From Gracilinanus agilis (Eukaryota), in contig NC_058130.1 in assembly GCF_016433145.1 (NCBI RefSeq), positions 308,194,293-308,258,292 on the forward strand: a stretch of DNA of 64,000 nt. The letters run 5' to 3'. The notes beneath the pieces are model-generated. The model worked only from the letters and a program-made list of their open reading frames with translations, did not search any database and had not been told where the DNA came from. The translations under genes and the position numbers were made by a program. Shown here one piece after another: positions 30,415 through 43,124 of this stretch (position 1 is the first letter of the stretch; every line of letters begins with the position of its first letter).

Positions 30415-30923
30415 CTTATTTGTAGCAGTAGCACTGGATCCAGGGACCACAGGTACATTCGTCACTTGCACAGAAAGATAATTATTATCTATAAGAGGCC
30501 AGGCACCTTCCACCTTGCATGTTTGAAAGTGATCATTAAAAGTTCTAAGATGAGGATCTCCAAACAAGCCACAAAAAAGGTAAGTGGGAGGACTCTGGTC
30601 CCCTCCCTGATGTTCTCTAGCTTCTGAATGGCTATGATAGTTACAAGGGTCATGGGTAACTTCAGGATTGGTAGAGGATGTGGGTCCATCCTTGGAACAG
30701 TTTCTCTGGCTCATGAGGTCATTGATTCCTAGCACAGCTGAATGGTAGACCAGGTTTCCACGGCAGGCTTTGGAAGTACGCTGGGTACAACCAGCATAAG
30801 CACGCAGAGCCTTGCAGAACTCTGAATCAAAGCCATCAATGGCAGAGTTCAGGTGAGAAGTCAGTGACACAAAGTCTGTAGTGCATTTCTGGATTCGACA
30901 CTGGGCTGGCTGTTGGCAATAAC
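30415..30923 (-). CDS. RGMB: RGMB coding exon (RGM N-terminal domain and start of vWD, with GDPH autocleavage motif)
   Basis: Acceptor ctttag|GT at 30923 gives [46 protein letters not shown]...FGDPHLRTF...SSATATNK. Donor AAG|GTAAGA at 30415/30414. Length 509 nt, phases consistent with flanking exons. Confidence 0.98.
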
Positions 30924-34790: not shown

Positions 34791-36501
34791 TTACTACAAC
34801 TCTGTGCAATACATTATGCTTTATATTTTCTTGGTGCAATAGTACTTTATACATACATCAAGACAAATTGCCCTTTTGTTAAACACTCATTTGACCCTAT
34901 TTTATTTTCTCTGAGCCCAAGTAGAAAGTGACTCAAGCCCAGATATGACCCCTCTCCCATTTTCAAAGCTTCTCTAATCATGTTTAAACCACCATAACCT
35001 TTAAACAAGGCCAACAAATAATACTATGTATTTATACAATTATTTGTATAGGAAATAAAAGTCCTAATTTGAATTTTTAGTTATGAAAATTGGCACATAC
35101 TTAAGGTTTGCATCTATCCCTTCCCCCATATCAGCAATTACATCAAAAGGAAATAACACAAGTCAAACTTGGTTGTGCTGACTTCTCCATGAAGTATTTC
35201 TTTTCTCTCCCACTACTCAGACAACTGATAAGTCCAAGTGGCATGAAAAGCACAATACTCACTTTGCTGATATAAGCACTAGAGATTGGAGTTCATATAA
35301 ATACATGGAAAGATCCTCAAATAAAAGGATAACACTTCCTGTTAAGTTCCAGGGAGTTCCTTTCCAGTTTTTTAATACATTTTTTTTCTATATCAGTGCC
35401 TTGCAAAGAAATCTCCAACACTTCCAAAGTGGTATTCGTCTTATCAGACTTAAAACACACAGACCAACAATCTAAACAACCTAAGAGGTACTCTGGCACA
35501 CTACAGTTGACTTCTTTCCTTTTCTGCTCAAAATCAAAATAGCTACAATGCTGTTTTCATTAGGGTAAGAGTAATCTGAATTATACAAAGGCAAAGGCTG
35601 GCAAACATAGACCTCACAGTCCCAGACACAGTCCCCGAAAATTTTGTGGGAGAGGATTGAAGACTGCTTGAAAGCAATTTTTTCAAATATGAACTTGGTG
35701 AAGTTTGGTTACGCTGAGATTAAGCTACACACTAGTTTCCACATTCAAGTTTAAATGTGCGATCTCTCCGCTTCTCCAACACCTCAATTCCAGGGAAACA
35801 ACTCAAGCCTCCTTCTATCCTGCTGAGAGAAGGTAGCAGCGGAAAACTGATCAGATCCCCGACTTTCAGTAAATACATTCGCAGAAAGCAATAAAGCATC
35901 CCGAGCATTTGTCTCAAGCTCAAAGCAACACTTCCCTTCTCCGCCCCAGCCCCCGACCCCCCAGCACCCTCAGGCTCCCACCGAAAGGACATCTCTCAGA
36001 GGTTTGTGCAACGAGGGAAGGAGGAAGGCCGGGAGGGGGGGGGGGGCGGGGAGGGAAAGGGGCCATCTTACGCTCATCTCCCAGACTCGCCAAATGTTTT
36101 GAACAGTTTATTCTAGTTGCTCCAACTACAAGGTTTTTTAAAAAGGTGGCTCCGCAGCCAGGTGTCTTGAAGACAGACACAAGTTTGCTTCTGCAATCTC
36201 TAGGGGTTTCTGCCAGAAACAAAGAAATCATTTTTTCCCCCCGAGGTCCCCCACTTCTAACACAACCACACCATTACCATGTTATCCCGGGGGGTGGGGG
36301 GGAGGGAAGGGGAGCTTTTCCAATTAGAGTAAAAGCGAGGGCGCCTTTCCCATCTCTCCCTCCCCCTATTTGCCCATTCCCGCGCAAGTCCGCGCCTGTC
36401 ACTGGAGTCGTGCGTGGGATGTGGGGTGTGGGTGCACAGGCGAGTGAGTGCAGAGGCACTTGTGAGAGCGCCCCTCCCGGGGGGCAGGGCTCTTTCAGTA
36501 C

Positions 36502-36637
36502 CTGCGGGCAGTCCCCCGAGGCCGAACAGGAGCAGCAGGGCGGTCAGCGGAGGCGAGTGCCAGCCGCGACGCTGGCGGCGCCGGCCCGACTCAGCCCTGG
36601 CGGCGGCGGCGGCGCAAGAAGGGGCAGCTCTCCCCAT
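36502..36637 (-). CDS. RGMB: RGMB coding exon with the canonical start; signal peptide MGRAAPSCAAAAARAESGRRRQRRGWHSPPLTALLLLFGLGGLPA(G)
   Basis: ATG at 36637 in strong context (ggcATGg). Translation resembles the mammalian RGMB N-terminus (MG.RAAPS.AAA...LLLL.F.LG.L.AG). Donor GCAG|GTACTG at 36502/36501, phase 1, 136 nt. Confidence 0.95.
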
Positions 36638-36743
36638 GCCCGTCCATGCAGGTCTCCTCCAGGGCTCTGACGGCAGCTTGGGGGCCCGGGATCCGGGACT
36701 GCTGCATGGACACGCGATCGGGCCTCGCTTCCTTTTCTTCCTC
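36638..36743 (-). CDS. RGMB: Putative N-terminal extension of a long RGMB isoform (RKKRKRGPIACPCSSPGSRAPKLPSEPWRRPAWTG)
   Basis: Stop-free and in frame with ATG 36637. Begins right after ctgaag| at 36743. Resembles the human long isoform N-terminus as recalled (MIRKKRKR...PC...EPTRPAWTGM). Confidence 0.55.
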
Positions 36744-37090
36744 CTTCAGTCCCGCGATGGCGTGGGGCGGCCGCCGCCCCCGCAAAAGCAGCAGCAGTAG
36801 CAACGGGGAGCAGCGCGCCAGAGGAGAACGGCCCCAGGCAGCATCGCAAGCAGAGGAGAAAAGAACACAAAGAACGCAAATGAGTACTGCCCTTATCCTC
36901 CCCACTCCCTAAAGCCACTCGTGCCCGGGATCTGGCGAGGCCCGGGTAAGGGGAATGCGTGCTAAGCGCGGGTGTGGGGGACGACTATGGGCGCGGGGCC
37001 CCTGCCTCACTCGGGTGTCTCTGCACGCCCCTCCCCCACCCCATCAATCAATCTCAGCGCCGCACTCCCCTCCCACGTCGGGCGCGCCCC

Positions 37091-37711
37091 CAGCCAATCC
37101 CCGCCCTCCTCCTACCTCAGCTGCGTCCCAGGGGCCGCTAGCGCCGGCAGACCCAGACAGACCCGACACTTCTCTGGGCCTCCGAGGCCCGCCCTCCCTG
37201 CCTAGGGCCTTGAGAGCGCGGCTGTCCTGGACAGTGTACGACGAAGCGATTTGCCATCGCTCTCGCTCAGCCTCCCCTCCTCTATTTACCGTTTCTCCTT
37301 CTCTTTTTGAAAAACGTATTCTAATCTAAAAAGACGCGCGGGCCGGGGTCCCTCTTTTTCGGTTACTTTTGGAGGGCCCCAATCGGCCTCCCAAGTTTCA
37401 CTCCCTTGTTTTCTATCGCGTGCTTCCCGCTCCCCCCTCCCTCAGCCACGCCCTATCTCGGTCCTAGCTCCTAAAGAGCGGCGCTAGGGAGTCACGTGTG
37501 CGGGGCTTCACCTTCGCAGCCAATCACCTCCCCCGATACCACATTCCGACTTAGATCTCGAGAGTGGAACGTTGCAGGCAAGAAAACGAGCTTTTCCAAG
37601 TCGGAATGTGACTGGCGGGTCGGGGGCTCTCCGATTGGCTGGGAAAAGTCTCAGTGGGCGCCTTTTGGAATTTACTGGTAGTTTTAATCGGTCCCGGCGA
37701 TCGCCCATTGG
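37091..37711. promoter_or_regulatory. Proximal promoter motifs: four CCAAT boxes, GC box, E-box
   Basis: CCAAT at 37094 (+), 37520 (+), 37634 (-) and 37707 (-). GC box CCCCGCCC at 37099. GTCACGTG at 37491-37498. Motif matches only. Confidence 0.6.
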
Positions 37712-37914
37712 CGTTTCTTACCCTAAACTTGACCATCAGCATCAGTGGTTAGTGGTTAGTTAGTGACTACTAGCTAGGAGATAGTTAGTTTAGGCACCTA
37801 CGGTTAGTTTTTTTACTTAGTTCACCCACAGTGGGCGAACTTTAACATGCCCGATTAGAGAGTAATTTGAGATTAATGAGAAGTTAATGCAGTGCCCCAG
37901 CTTAACTAGTTATG

Positions 37915-38060
37915 AAATCATGGATGGGGCAAGTCACAACTTCTCATAACCTCAGTTTCTTCATCTGAAAAAGGCAGCTTATTCGCCCTACCTACCTACC
38001 TCGCAGGGTTGTGCTGAGAAAAAGACTTAAAATGCTATCTAAATAAAAATGTGTTACTGT
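37915..38060 (+). mobile_element. MIR-type SINE at the CpG island edge
   Basis: gggcaagtcacaacttctcataacctcagtttcttcatctgaaaa...cctacctcgcagggttgtg. Confidence 0.7.
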
Positions 38061-39089
38061 TATGTTATGCCTATACGATAACTGACTTTAGACTTTGTAA
38101 GGCATCCTAGAACTTAGTAGTCAAGGATTTAATGGTAACTAAATCTGTTTTCCCTAAATTGAAAACAATAAGGAAAAGATCAGTTTGTAAGGAGACTGAA
38201 AAAGGAGAAAAACAGATTCCTGTAATCAGACAGATGATAAGAATTCAACCTCGATATCTGTAGTTGTGAAGGGCCAGCTAATTTACTCAAATTACTCGAA
38301 TATGCTCTCTCTTGGAATATTATCTTTAAACTGATTGACTTTTTTTTTTTTAATGTCAACTTAGTCCTGATTCACAACTTTTGCACTATTTGAAATAAGC
38401 AGTTATGGATACATCACCCTCTCCCCTCTTTTTCTTAAACAATGTAGTTTTCAAATATATTTGGATAGTGTAAGGGTTTGCAGCATCCTCCCTCAACGAC
38501 AATTTACTCCTTAAAGACTCCTTGCTACTCTGGATTGCCTCCGCTATTTAGCTATACCTTTTCACTGCTTAATTATTACACACCATGGTGAGTCAAGTAG
38601 TAAACATAACCTTCACTGCCTAAGATATAATTCAAGCTTTGACTATATTATAATATAGTCAATATAATAATAGCTTTAAATACCACCTGGAGAAATGATT
38701 TTTGGTAGAAGAATCAGATTTCATATTTCAAGATTTTGCTGAATACTGAAATCATTCTCTTGGCACAAGTATATTGTAGGATATAAATAATTATCATGCT
38801 AGATAAAGTAAATCAAAACAGTACCATTTTTTCTTTAAAAAGATAAACAGGTACAATTCAGTATTCTAAAATATTTGAATAAAACTGACACAGTTTATAA
38901 AATTTGTTCTGCTAGTCCTCCTTTAATCCAGAAATGTGTACTTTAAGAACAAATTAAAATAAATTCTTTGTGCGACAGGATATAACTAATATTAAAAAAT
39001 AAAGAAAATAACTTAGGTTTGTTTTTTCATGACTCCCTGAGGTTTTCTTATTTTCATTACTATGATGACAGGTACTCTAGGGTTTGGTA

Positions 39090-39103
39090 ACAATAGAGGG
39101 CGC
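39090..39103 (+). promoter_or_regulatory. Candidate CTCF site
   Basis: ACAATAGAGGGCGC matches 12/14 positions of CCASYAGRKGGCRS and retains an isolated CpG. Confidence 0.45.
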
Positions 39104-41255
39104 TCTCTGCAAACTCTACCGTCACTAAATGACACTTCTTAACAGAAAAAATTTCATCTCCTCTAAGGTGCTTCATTGTTCCTCTGTTGTAAAATTTGAC
39201 AAGCCCAAGATTTATGTGTGTAACAATTCACTTTTTATTGCAATATAAGTGTATAGTTGGCTAGAGGGAAATGCTAATTTTTACAATTAAGCTAGGAGGT
39301 GGTTCCCATTTTCAAGTGTCAAGGCATTAGGTGAGCTGAGGGACTGGAACAGTGAATTAAAACTGTTATCAATAAATTCTAGCAGGGTTTAAACCCAGGA
39401 GCTTTGAAGCTAGACATCCAAGGGCCCATAGTCTTTTCTAAGTTTATGTGCTACCTGGATTAAGGAAGTAAAAACTAAAAAAGGTCCCCAGTATTAACTT
39501 GAGGAAAAACAGAATTCAATAACTATTCCATTACTGATATGTAATGATTTTACATTTCAAACTAACAATATGCTAAAATCAATAATTTTACAATTCGGAA
39601 ATCTCTCTAGTTAATTAGTTCTTCCTCATCTCCTTCCTTCCTCTTCCTTTTTTTCTTTTAGTCAAGAAAAGGGAAACAAGGTAGCAGACTATTCAGGGAT
39701 CAAGGAAAATATAAACTTAACTTGTAACTGGGTAGAATTCAAACACATGTAAGAAGCATTAATGGATTTTAAACAAAATGTGGTTTGCTTTTCCTGAAAG
39801 CATTCATGATGGCTTAACTGTTCCCCTGTTAATATAATCTCCATTTTCAGAAATCCAACACAGGTCTCTAGGTCTGTCTGCTTAATACAATACAATACAT
39901 TAGGAAAGAGCAGCTGGGTATCAGACCTGGGGTTTCAATTTTTAAAACACAGTATATATGATATGTTTTCCAAACTTCCCCACCCCCACTTATTATTTAC
40001 CATTTTGAATGTGGGAGGTCAACGGACTAAAATAAAATGTTCTAAAAGAAAACAAAGCTCTCCATATGTTTGTACTTACATCATCTTTAACCCTTATGGT
40101 CCTATATGGTGCCTGGAGGGCCAAAGGGGCATCGAAAGTCCTTGAAAAGCTGGATGTTGGCACTTACTTTTTGAATCTGTGTATTAGATGATAGACAGGA
40201 CAACAGTTAGAACCCTGTCAAGAAGAGGGGGGGGTGGTAAGGATTCATTCATTGTACCTACAAAAATTGGCTGACAGGATCCCAACATCTTTACAACCAC
40301 TCACTGAGCTTGAAAGTAGCAGGTGCAAAAAGCATTGGGAGCGGATTGCCAGAGCCAGAGAGGTAATGTGCTTCCTGACCATTTATCTCAGGAAACCAGT
40401 ACAGTCTTCTCTTCGAAACAAAATTAACCTCTCATTAGCCAGGCACTCACTCCCAAGAAAGCCTTAAAAGCTTTACCATCTCACTAATGTATTTAGGATT
40501 TTCTTCCAGGCAATTATTACCATCAGTTACACTGTGATCCCCAGCCCAGGCCCAGCTTTCATTTGGCCAGGCTAGCTCTGAAACCACCTGCCCCAAAGAT
40601 TAGGATATCAAATATCGTCTTTGGGGTTCCTGCCTGGTATGTTGGGTACAGACCCGGGTTTATCCTCAAGAGTGTTAAATACTGCCAAGTCAGTTAATAC
40701 TATTTGCAAGAATTATATGGAAAAGTATCCTCACACAAAGGAAACATGCACTAAACCACCTATTTTTCTGGGATTCTTATAGGACAAAGTTTTCCATCAA
40801 CTCCACCTACATGCCACACACATATATATTCATCTTACAGGAACCTTTTTTCTTGTAAGTAACTGAAATGGCAGAGACTGATTTTGTAGCCCCAGAAGAA
40901 CTGCTGCTGCTAGTCAAACAGTGGAAACCTGCTGCCCGAACAAGCTGTTTTACAGCTAGTGTTTTGTAAAGGGTTGTGTGTATGCCCTATACCTATATAT
41001 CAGCCTTCCAGTGTCATGCATCAAATTGCTTCAACTCTGCAGATGTTGTAAAGAGGCCATTCTTGTAGGTGGGAAGCAGCTTTTAGCAGAGCCTCCTTTT
41101 CTAAGCGACTTCCTTGAGGGCTGACAGATTTCTACAACGCTGGTGGGATGGAGAGCAGAGCAATACAGTTCAGTTCCCAACGCCCTCCTCCTCTACCTCT
41201 CTAAAATACCTTCATTCCCTGTCTGTCCCTCACCGCCCGCCGCCCCCCACCCCCC

Positions 41256-41342
41256 NNNNNNNNNNNNNNNNNNNNNNNNNNNNNNNNNNNNNNNNNNNNN
41301 NNNNNNNNNNNNNNNNNNNNNNNNNNNNNNNNNNNNNNNNNN
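41256..41342. other. Assembly gap (87 N) within a C-run tract
   Basis: N run. Confidence 1.
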
Positions 41343-41383
41343 CCCCCACCCCACCGCAAACTCTAACAAAATAAACAACTCAC

Positions 41384-41460
41384 CATAGGCATTCCCTTGT
41401 CTTCATGGTGACGTTTGCCAGCTGGGAAAATGAGCCACAAGCCATGCAGCTTCGGTGCAT
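41384..41460 (-). CDS. RGMB: Putative coding part of a distal RGMB first exon (MHRSCMACGSFSQLANVTMKTRECL-W)
   Basis: Three in-frame ATGs (41460, 41445, 41406; the last in gtcaccATG context). Donor ATG|GTGAGT at 41384/41383 is phase 2, matching the acceptor at 36743. Prediction only. Confidence 0.5.
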
Positions 41461-41609
41461 GAAGAAAGGAGCGCGGTCCCAGCGCCCCTTTCCCCTAGGT
41501 AAAGTAAGGAGGTCTGTAACACCTCCAGCCAGGCGGGATTTGTCCTTCTCTGTGTAGGCTAGGCGGTCTCCCAGTGCCTGGCACAGCAGCCAAAGGAGGG
41601 GACGTGCCT

Positions 41610-41690
41610 TTAATGACAGCGTGATCGCTCCGCCATCTATATAAAGAAGGGGAGGGAATTCCCTAATTCCCTTCTCCGTTCTGAGAAACT
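41610..41690 (-). promoter_or_regulatory. Putative distal RGMB core promoter (GAS, kB, TATA, Inr)
   Basis: TTCTGAGAA 41679-41687, GGGAATTCCC 41654-41663, minus-strand TATATAG from 41643, and Inr GTCA(+1)TT with A at 41614 (29 nt downstream). Lies in a weaker CpG-enriched patch at about 41.2-42.2 kb. Confidence 0.55.
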
Positions 41691-43124
41691 ATCTCCCTTC
41701 CTAATTCCCGGCCCCTCCCCCTACCAAAGAAGGGCTGAAGGAGCGCGCTGGTTTGCCCTCTCCGCTCGCATCTCTGAAATCCACATGGCCCCCTACAGGA
41801 GCTTTCTGAAGCTACTGTAACCACTGGAATGTACCTGCACATCTGGCGGAATCAGCTGAGCATGGCAACCCGGGCCCTACGGTTCCCCCCTCTCCTTTTC
41901 TCTGCCCAACCCCCTTTCCCTTTTTCCAGAAGACTTGCACAAAGGGTGTCTTTCACCGCTGGAACATTCAGTGCCTCCCAGTCTGCCGCCTCGCATTTTC
42001 CCACCCGCGGCACTTGTTCACAACATAATACTGTTTCTGCCTTTGCCTGGACTGAGCAGCAACCAACGCGTGTTACAACCTCAAAGTATTTAAGCAATCA
42101 ACAAACGCTCCGCCCTCCCTCAATTCACTCCCTCCCCCAACCCGGTCCCAGAGTCCAGAAGCCAGCTGGGAGATTGAGATCACTATGGCCGGGTCCAGAC
42201 TAGCCCTCTTCCTTCTAGTTGTTTCCTTGCTTAGAGTCACATTCTGTATTTGTTTCTTTCCCCTTAGCCATCCGACAGAGATTTATCACTTTCTATAATT
42301 TTATTGTTTATAAATTTTGAAGTGTGGAAGATTTTGTGCGCGCCTGAATTTGTAAGGAGCAGAACCAGTCAATTTCTAAGATTCCTCCCAATCTCAAAAT
42401 TCTATGAGAGAGAGAGAGAGACAGAGAGACAGAGAGAAAGAAAGGGTCATGGACCCTTCTGGGCAATATCAACTTCTCGGCATAATGTTTGTAAATGCAC
42501 CTAAAGACATACATCAGATTACAAAAGCAATAAATTATATTGAAGTAAAGATATAATTCTTCCTCCTCCAAGTCCATGTATACTCTAAAATAAGTTCACA
42601 GACTATGGTTCTCAGGTTAGAAAATTCCAGAATTAATCGTGTCACCAACTAAACAGTCTACTGGGTTTTTTTTTTTTCTTCCTCTGGTTTAAGGGTTCTG
42701 AGGAGGGGAAAGGTTAGGTTGCAAGGTTAACTAACAGTGAAAAGTTGTAATTCGAAAAACCAACCAACCAACCTAGAATTATTAGGTAAAGGAACTTTCC
42801 ATTAAAGTGACTATGTTTGGGGTAGGAGCTGTTGTCCACATAAAGACAGAAGTTGTAGGTTTCTTTCTTCACTGGGGTACTCTGACAATGTTGAGAAGAT
42901 TTGTAGGGCAAAAATTCAGGTGAAGAATATGGTTTTTCTATCTAATCTGTTTATATTTGTTCTTATGGACACTATCAGTTGTCATCATTCCTATCTAGTT
43001 CATTACCTTCAACTTCAACTCCAGTTTATTTGGACTCTTACTTTTATCCCTATACTATAAGACCACTTTACTCATTTTTCTGGTGCTTTAAGGCTTGTAA
43101 AATGCTTTCCTTATATTCCCTTTC

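What the first reader, a model, noticed from the sequence alone, without database searches (positions are those of the whole stretch)
36638..41614. Predicted long RGMB isoform: distal first exon splices in frame to put a polybasic RKKRKR segment ahead of the signal peptide
Seen on the minus strand: (1) a perfect donor ATG|GTGAGT at 41384, followed by intronic G-runs; (2) the first three ATGs after the predicted TSS at 41614 (41460, 41445, 41406) share one frame that ends in phase 2; (3) the AG at 36745-36744 opens a phase-2 exon start at 36743. Joining them gives MHRSCMACGSFSQLANVT-MKTRECL-W-RKKRKRGPIACPCSSPGSRAPKLPSEPWRRPAWTG-MGRAAPS..., a 43-61 aa extension (481-499 aa protein). In unspliced sequence this frame is closed by TGA (36748-36746) just upstream of the acceptor, so only splicing can create it. 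From memory, human RGMB has an annotated long isoform starting MIRKKRKR...PC...RPAWTGM, and the similarity begins at this acceptor. Inference: a basic, NLS-like leader 45-80 residues before the hydrophobic core could change topology or targeting of a GPI-anchored BMP/neogenin/PD-L2 ligand (signal-anchor, cytosolic or nuclear form), switchable by promoter choice.
Basis: partly seen in the sequence, partly recalled or inferred. Interest (0 to 1): 0.8.

Follow-up and report, generated by a model that had tools for sequence, protein, structure and literature searches.

The report
RGMB long isoform, wrong first exon

Summary
The acceptor and the RKKRKR...PAWTG extension are correct.

The donor exon is wrong. 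In Tasmanian devil, koala, Dromiciops, goat and a wall lizard, the long RGMB coding sequence starts with a split codon, ATGAT|GTAAGT. The 20-mer GGGTTAAAGATGATGTAAGT occurs exactly once in the window, at 40093-40074. Joining 40080 to 36743 gives MMRKKRKRGPIACPCSSP..., 475 aa, 94% identical end to end to Monodelphis domestica isoform X1.

With the predicted 97-nt exon 2 included, its ATG frame stops at the junction. None of the 289 proteins fetched has that leader. ATG 41460 is unique to this species, and goat has none of the three ATGs.

The N gap lies in intron 1 and touches no reading frame.

The scan's other notes on this window cover neighbouring features, not this exon 2.

Verdict: already known, low interest.

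The parts
41384..41614 (-). The 5' end at about 41614 is inferred from the TATA element at 41643-41638. The donor is TATG|GTGAGT after 41384.
   Evidence: Mean column identity is 93% across window, devil, koala and Dromiciops, including the TATA element and the donor. It aligns to goat exon 1, and the donor of goat gene model P0179 falls at the same position. ATG 41460 occurs only in the window. ATGs 41445 and 41406 are in all four marsupials but not in goat.
41256..41342 (.). Assembly gap (N) inside intron 1, within a G-rich run.
   Evidence: The flanks are collinear in three other marsupials, 13, -2 and -2 nt apart. No reading frame crosses the gap.
40313..40513 (-). Conserved non-coding block in intron 1, about 230-430 nt upstream of the exon 2 start codon.
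   Evidence: 87.6% identity over 202 nt to goat, and 83.6% over 122 nt to wall lizard at the same relative position. Near-identical in devil. No Rfam match.
40080..40176 (-). Predicted exon 2 (97 nt), ending ATG AT. ATG is at 40084-40082 and the donor GT at 40079-40078. The 5' boundary is inferred.
   Evidence: GGGTTAAAGATGATGTAAGT matches perfectly at 40093-40074, with 0 matches expected by chance. Devil, koala, Dromiciops and lizard gene models start their CDS at exactly this ATGAT|GTAAGT; goat has GGGTTAAGAATGAT|GTAAGT. AG at 40178-40177 is conserved in four marsupials, 30 nt after TTCTAAC/ACTAAC at 40212-40206.
36744..36887 (-). 3' end of intron 2: a 143-nt AG-free zone with a distal pyrimidine tract (36865-36852) and the acceptor AG at 36745-36744. 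A second AG follows 3 nt later (NAGNAG).
   Evidence: 52 of 5000 shuffles reach this length. The acceptor context ...ctgaag|GAGGAAG and the AG-free stretch are conserved in devil, koala, Dromiciops and lizard.
36502..36743 (-). Exon 3. The first base completes the split second codon. Codons 36742-36638 encode RKKRKRGPIACPCSSPGSRAPKLPSEPWRRPAWTG. The short-isoform ATG is at 36637-36635, followed by the signal-peptide core. The donor is CAG|GTACTG.
   Evidence: The exon 3/4 junction is seen in a Monodelphis RNA contig, L001.
30415..30923 (-). Exon 4 (RGM N-terminal domain).
   Evidence: tblastn with the lizard RGMB, splice contexts and RNA contig L001.
9821..10492 (-). Coding part of exon 5 (RGM C-terminal domain, GPI signal, stop codon).

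Best explanation
The window holds the 5' half of RGMB on the minus strand, with the five-exon layout known from human. The layout is exon 1 (about 41614-41384, untranslated, TATA-driven), exon 2 (predicted 40176-40080, ending ATGAT), exon 3 (36743-36502), exon 4 and exon 5.

The long isoform is made when exon 2 joins exon 3. ATG AT + G AGG AAG... reads MMRKKRKRGPIACPCSSP...PAWTG-MGRAAPS..., 475 aa. This puts 37 extra residues (net charge +9) ahead of the usual start. The hydrophobic signal core then sits at residues 70-80.

In the exon 1-2-3 mRNA, the exon 1 ATGs are upstream ORFs. Transcripts that begin in the CpG island just upstream of exon 3 meet the in-frame TGA and can only make the 438-aa short form.

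Shown here: the sequence features, their conservation, and end-to-end colinearity with annotated long isoforms.

Inferred: the exon 2 acceptor, use of these junctions in this species, and translation of the extension. After signal-peptidase cleavage both isoforms would give the same mature GPI-anchored protein. The likeliest effect of the extension is therefore on translation or targeting efficiency, or on the fate of the released signal-peptide fragment.
For: Split start codon: the unique perfect 20-mer sits at 40093-40074. Devil, koala, Dromiciops and lizard coding sequences all start at ATGAT|GTAAGT, and goat has the same exon end.

Acceptor: the context is conserved in three other marsupials and the lizard.

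Spliced product: the ORF is 475 aa with one stop. It is 94.1% identical to M. domestica X1 over residues 1-475 versus 1-476, and 90-91% identical to devil, koala and Dromiciops.

Spread of the isoform: 28 fetched RGMB proteins from mammals, squamates and turtles start M(M)RKKRKR, and several frogs start MKKRKR or MKRRKR.

Reading frame: extension lengths are 111, 111, 123 and 114 nt in window, devil, goat and lizard, so all indels are in frame. Window versus lizard gives 17 identical, 8 synonymous and 12 non-synonymous codons.

Exon path: eutherian models read exon 1 | exon 2 | exon 3 as ...NACG|PACSG...GLRMM|RKKRKR.

Upstream ORFs: mapped.

Human gene: five exons and proteins of 478 and 437 aa, with the 478-aa transcript predominant (PMC6370684). 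Exons 1 and 2 are 5' exons, and exon 3 carries 118 nt of leader plus 45 codons (PMC11488336). The window has 106 nt plus 45 codons.
Against: The exon 2 acceptor is chosen by conservation and branch-point logic only. A second AG at 40151-40150 is possible but is absent in Dromiciops.

Within marsupials the extension shows no codon-position bias: 3, 3 and 2 variable sites. Its conservation there could be at the RNA level.

The literature treats exons 1 and 2 as non-coding and the protein as 437 aa (PMC11488336). The downstream ATG has a strong context (gggcATGG).

Bird and fish models start at MG.
Confidence: 0.8

Rival explanations
1. One reading: exon 1 (donor 41384) splices directly to 36743, skipping exon 2. 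Its in-frame ATGs then give a 481-499 aa protein with an MHRSCMACG.../MKTRECLW leader ahead of RKKRKR.
For: The frame arithmetic is right. ATGs 41445 and 41406, the open frame and the phase-2 donor are kept without indels in all four marsupials. ATG 41406 has a good context (caccATGA). The long AG-free zone at the exon 3 acceptor is typical of regulated splicing. A cat-family model skips exons 2-3 (P0186), so exon skipping from exon 1 does occur in this gene.
Against: It must skip an exon whose end is identical from lizard to marsupials. ATG 41460 is CTG or TTG in the other marsupials, and goat has none of the three ATGs. The six variable sites fall 2, 2 and 2 across codon positions and four change the residue, so there is no sign of coding constraint. 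None of the 289 fetched proteins has the leader, and the short isoforms annotated in marsupials start at MGRAAPS.
Confidence: 0.08
2. The extension is never translated to a meaningful level. Exons 1 and 2 and the first 106 nt of exon 3 act only as a 5' leader, conserved for translational control through upstream ORFs. The 438-aa protein would then be the only product. This rival concerns translation, not the exon structure, so it can hold together with the structural part of the best explanation.
For: The literature describes exons 1 and 2 as non-coding (PMC11488336). Several upstream ATGs precede the exon 2 ATG, and an out-of-frame upstream ORF overlaps the 36637 start. There is no codon-position bias among marsupials. 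Fish and bird models start at MG.
Against: The ATGAT start and its context are identical from lizard to marsupials. All indels in the extension are multiples of three across amniotes, and synonymous changes occur at conserved residues. The basic N-terminus and the AWTGMG end are kept at the protein level from mammals to squamates (frogs have a variant, PEWMGMG). The human transcript that encodes the 478-aa form is the predominant one (PMC6370684).
Confidence: 0.3
3. The start codon lies in the same exon as RKKRKR, so no splice is needed, and this species has lost it by mutation.
For: This was an initial reading, based on eutherian proteins that run ...GAEGLRMMRKKRKR without an obvious break.
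Against: Genomic DNA from devil, koala, Dromiciops, goat and lizard shows an intron of 3-6 kb between ATGAT and G AGG AAG. The GLRMM residues are the translated end of exon 2 (gggttaaagATGAT). The window has both halves intact.
Confidence: 0.01

Closest known systems
Human RGMB isoform 1 (478 aa, transcript ENST00000308234; PMC6370684)
   Same: Five-exon gene in which two 5' exons precede the signal-peptide exon. An N-terminal basic extension ends ...PAWTGMG, just before the 437-aa start. The exon 3 layout also matches: about 110 nt of leader plus 45 codons (PMC11488336).
   Different: By my recollection the human protein starts MI rather than MM; this was not checked with a tool. The middle of the extension differs: proline/alanine-rich in eutherians, PIACPCSSPGS in marsupials and squamates.
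Monodelphis domestica RGMB isoform X1 (XP_007486644, 476 aa, P0288), with the devil, koala, Antechinus, wallaby and Dromiciops long isoforms
   Same: All six start MM(R/K)KKRKRGPI(A/S)CPCSSPG. The window's product is 94.1% identical end to end to the Monodelphis protein. In the three whose DNA was read (devil, koala, Dromiciops), the split start codon is the same.
   Different: The window comes from a different species; its sequence differs in the signal-peptide region and it is one residue shorter. Monodelphis genomic DNA could not be fetched.
Squamate RGMB long isoforms (for example Podarcis muralis X1, P0002)
   Same: The exon 2 end is identical (aagggttaaagATGAT|gtaagta), and so is the acceptor (gaag|GAGGAAG). 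The protein begins MMRKKRKRGGPIACSCSSP, and an AG-free zone precedes the acceptor.
   Different: blastn found no ortholog of exon 1 within 10 kb upstream. The lizard has one extra glycine codon.
Long signal peptides with an extended N-domain (for example the MMTV Rem/Env signal peptide, which carries a nuclear localisation signal); from my own knowledge, not tested
   Same: A basic, NLS-like segment tens of residues ahead of the hydrophobic core of a cleavable signal sequence.
   Different: No evidence here that the RGMB extension is translated, cleaved off as a stable fragment, or reaches the nucleus.

Membership tests
RGMB gene (repulsive guidance molecule B / DRAGON) | Encodes the RGM N- and C-terminal domains in three coding exons, collinear with known RGMB proteins. 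| tested here: met
   tblastn of lizard RGMB onto the window gives 75-80% identity in exons 4 and 5. The spliced product is 94% identical to M. domestica RGMB. The hits carry PF06535 and PF06534.
Annotated long RGMB isoform (MM/MI-RKKRKR extension) | Start codon split across a splice: the exon ends ATGAT followed by GTAAGT. | tested here: met
   Perfect unique 20-mer at 40093-40074. Same structure in devil, koala, Dromiciops, lizard and goat.
Annotated long RGMB isoform (MM/MI-RKKRKR extension) | Phase-2 acceptor that opens the exon with G AGG AAG AA(A/G) AGG AAG. | tested here: met
   36743 onward. Conserved in three marsupials and the lizard.
Annotated long RGMB isoform (MM/MI-RKKRKR extension) | Open frame from the exon 2 ATG through to the MG start, and full-length colinearity with annotated long isoforms. 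| tested here: met
   475-aa ORF aligning 1-475 to 1-476 of P0288 at 94.1%. Extension lengths are multiples of 3 in four species.
Annotated long RGMB isoform (MM/MI-RKKRKR extension) | Transcripts in this species that join 40080 to 36743. | not testable with these tools
The Monodelphis RNA contig L001 begins inside exon 3.
Annotated long RGMB isoform (MM/MI-RKKRKR extension) | The extension is translated. | not testable with these tools
   No ribosome-profiling or proteomic data are reachable. The papers read do not address it (PMC6370684, PMC11488336).
   41460 is absent from devil, koala and Dromiciops. 41445 and 41406 are present in all four marsupials. None of the three is in goat.
   0 of 289 fetched proteins. 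The short-piece search found nothing.
Long signal peptide with an N-terminal extension | Hydrophobic core far from the N-terminus, preceded by a charged N-domain. | tested here: met
   The most hydrophobic 11-mer is at residues 70-80. Net charge is +9 in residues 1-37 and +6 in residues 38-66.
Long signal peptide with an N-terminal extension | Cleavage by signal peptidase, and the fate of the released fragment. | not testable with these tools
   Needs experiment.

The most novel reading that the evidence does not exclude
The tetrapod-wide polybasic leader (MMRKKRKRG...AWTG) is translated and has a role of its own. Examples: a long signal peptide whose cleaved, NLS-like N-domain acts after targeting, or a switch between secretory and non-secretory RGMB set by the choice between the exon 1/2 promoter and the CpG-island promoter just upstream of exon 3. 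A marsupial-specific variant made by exon 2 skipping (MKTRECLW-RKKRKR...) is also not excluded.
Probability: 0.15. Interest if true: 0.5.

Novelty: already known. Interest (0 to 1): 0.15.

Why it matters
RGMB is a BMP co-receptor and a neogenin and PD-L2 ligand. Gene annotation gives a 478-aa human protein, while the experimental literature works with 437 aa and calls exons 1 and 2 non-coding.

This work shows that the split start codon, its context and the in-frame extension are conserved from lizards to marsupials. That argues the long form deserves a direct test. This is a point about an already annotated isoform, not a new discovery.

For the scan, the lesson is practical. A correct acceptor plus any in-frame upstream donor is not enough. 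A 97-nt exon carrying the real start codon was missed between them.

Tried and rejected
No junction reads could be obtained.

2. The look-up of sequencing runs: many runs labelled 'RNA?' hold a constant 0.25 or 0.32 of the sampled words of the exon 1 and exon 3 stretches. This is compatible with transcription of conserved parts in a relative, but it is uninterpretable without laying reads.

3. A protein search with the 80-aa exon 3 piece found nothing because of the length window. A full-length lizard RGMB obtained through the representative search was then used to reach other species.

5. I looked for an exon 1 inside the proximal CpG island (36900-37800). Donor-like sites lie near 37117 and 37010, but no ATG reaches them in phase 2 (reading). 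This was rejected once the conserved exon 2 was found.

6. The idea that the ATG is contiguous with RKKRKR and was lost in this species was rejected.

7. My back-translated guess that eutherians keep the exon 1 ATG (M.TRECL) was wrong for goat, which has GTG and CTG at those positions.

8. Rfam found nothing in 36000-42500.


Full report
**Observation.** On the minus strand the window reads ...ttcttcATGCACCGAAGCTGCATGGCT...CACCATGAAGACAAGGGAATGCCTATG|GTGAGTTG. The three ATGs at 41460, 41445 and 41406 share one frame, and two bases of a codon are left at the donor after 41384. The acceptor is ...gggactgaAG|GAGGAAGAAAAGGAAGCGA, with the exon starting at 36743, and TGA at 36748-36746 lies in frame just upstream. 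The description is therefore accurate.

**The N gap.** The gap at 41256-41342 lies 42 nt downstream of that donor, so none of the proposed frames crosses it. In Tasmanian devil, koala and Dromiciops the sequences that match its two flanks are 13, -2 and -2 nt apart. The flanks are collinear and nothing sizeable is missing. I did not read or infer the missing letters.

**The gene.** tblastn with a full-length RGMB places three coding exons on the minus strand: 36743-36502, 30923-30415 and 10492-9821. All have standard splice contexts. A Monodelphis RNA contig (L001) confirms the last two junctions in a close relative.

**How widespread the extension is.** A profile search returned RGMB proteins from many vertebrates.
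- Twenty-eight of the fetched proteins begin M(M)(R/K)KKRK.., from eutherians, six marsupials, squamates and turtles. Frogs begin MKKRKR or MKRRKR. Fish and most birds begin at MG.
- Monodelphis domestica has an annotated X1 of 476 aa (MMRKKRKRGPIACPCSSPGSRAP...) and an X2 of 439 aa.
- In human, 478-aa and 437-aa proteins are described, and the 478-aa transcript is the predominant one (PMC6370684).

The long isoform is therefore already annotated across tetrapods.

**Where the start codon comes from.** Genomic loci for devil (L002, L003), koala (L005), Dromiciops (L006) and the wall lizard Podarcis (L004) all start their coding range at ...aagggttaaagATGAT|gtaagta.... RKKRKR follows 3.4-6.3 kb further on. 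Goat has ...gggttaagaATGAT|gtaagta. The second methionine codon is therefore split: AT from one exon and G from the next.

The 20-mer GGGTTAAAGATGATGTAAGT occurs once in the window, at 40093-40074 on the minus strand, with no mismatch and none expected by chance. Joining 40080 to 36743 gives ATG ATG AGG AAG AAA AGG AAG CGA..., a 475-aa ORF. It aligns end to end with M. domestica X1 at 94.1% and with the devil, koala and Dromiciops long forms at 90-91%.

The donor was not.

The stretch 41720-41343 is 93% identical column by column among the four marsupials, including the TATA element (41643-41638) and the donor. It also aligns to goat at 77%, and the exon 1 donor of goat gene model P0179 falls on the position equivalent to 41384.

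Eutherian models read exon 1 | exon 2 | exon 3 as ...NACG|PACSG...GAEGLRMM|RKKRKR, where GLRMM is the translated end of the ATGAT exon. The literature gives human RGMB five exons. Exons 1 and 2 are 5' exons, and exon 3 carries 118 nt of leader plus the first 45 codons (PMC11488336). The window's exon 3 has 106 nt plus 45 codons.

**Exon 2 boundary (inferred).** I place the acceptor at AG 40178-40177, which is conserved in all four marsupials. It lies 30 nt after a TTCTAAC/ACTAAC branch-point motif and a pyrimidine-rich tract. This gives a 97-nt exon. An alternative AG at 40151-40150 is absent in Dromiciops.

The other exon 1 and exon 2 ATGs open upstream ORFs of 7-27 codons.

In favour:
- The arithmetic works.
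- ATGs 41445 and 41406 are kept in four marsupials.
- The exon 3 acceptor has a conserved 143-nt AG-free zone, a feature often linked to regulated splicing.

Against:
- ATG 41460 is CTG or TTG in the other marsupials.
- Goat has none of the three ATGs.
- The few substitutions show no coding pattern: 2, 2 and 2 by codon position.
- None of the 289 proteins fetched has the leader.
- The short isoforms annotated in marsupials start at MGRAAPS.

I give it under 10%.

**Is the canonical extension translated?**

For coding:
- The start context is identical from lizard to marsupials.
- Extension lengths of 111, 111, 123 and 114 nt keep the frame.
- Window versus lizard has 8 synonymous and 12 non-synonymous codon differences, with conserved basic and AWTGMG ends.

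Against, or neutral:
- There is no codon-position bias within marsupials.
- Upstream ATGs precede the exon 2 start, and the downstream ATG has a strong context.
- The literature assumes a 437-aa protein.

I could not test translation.

If the extension is made, the hydrophobic core sits at residues 70-80 behind a strongly basic N-domain. The expected result is a long cleavable signal peptide and the same mature protein. Other fates (signal anchor, nuclear fragment) are speculation.

**Verdict.** The extension and the acceptor are real. The isoform is a known, widely annotated one. The proposed first exon and its novel leader are not supported.

Noticed in passing
window 40313-40513 (minus strand), intron 1: A deeply conserved non-coding block about 230-430 nt upstream of the exon 2 start codon. 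It is 87.6% identical over 202 nt to goat and 83.6% over 122 nt to wall lizard at the same relative position, and near-identical in devil. It is AT-rich with several TAAT cores (taattg, ctaatgag, ggttaatttt). It may be an enhancer or an alternative promoter.
   Followed up: partly
window 40162-40167 (minus strand), inside predicted exon 2: A perfect donor-like GTAAGT lies 10 nt after the predicted exon 2 acceptor (cag|ATTCAAAAAGTAAGTG) and is conserved in all four marsupials. Its role is unknown, and it may mean the exon 2 boundary is not as predicted.
   Followed up: no
window 36400-37800: The only strong CpG island of the region covers exon 3 and about 1 kb upstream and contains several CCAAT/ATTGG boxes. 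It is probably a proximal promoter. Transcripts starting there meet the in-frame TGA at 36748-36746 and can encode only the 438-aa form. A rodent-like assembled transcript protein (P0167) reads into RKKRRKR from unspliced upstream sequence.
   Followed up: partly
window 36744-36887, and L002, L005, L006, L004 upstream of their RKKRKR exons: The long AG-free zone with a distal pyrimidine tract ahead of the exon 3 acceptor is conserved from lizard to marsupials.
   Followed up: partly
window 41384-41386 (minus strand): The last three bases of exon 1 are ATG only in this species; the other three marsupials and goat have GTG. This adds a species-specific upstream ORF of 25 codons with exon 2 included, or of 51 codons overlapping the 36637 start if exon 2 is skipped.
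   Followed up: yes
whole RGMB locus in the window: The window is not from the Monodelphis domestica reference. The spliced protein is 94% identical to M. domestica RGMB. The Monodelphis RNA contig L001 is 91-98% identical to the window's exons.
   Followed up: partly
literature versus annotation: The 2024 RGMb review calls exons 1 and 2 non-coding and gives 437 aa (PMC11488336). Gene annotation and PMC6370684 give 478 aa as the main human product. No paper found here tests which start is used.
   Followed up: partly
window 37938-37977: read laying refuses this stretch because of a filter. Future calls should lay the two sides separately.
   Followed up: no
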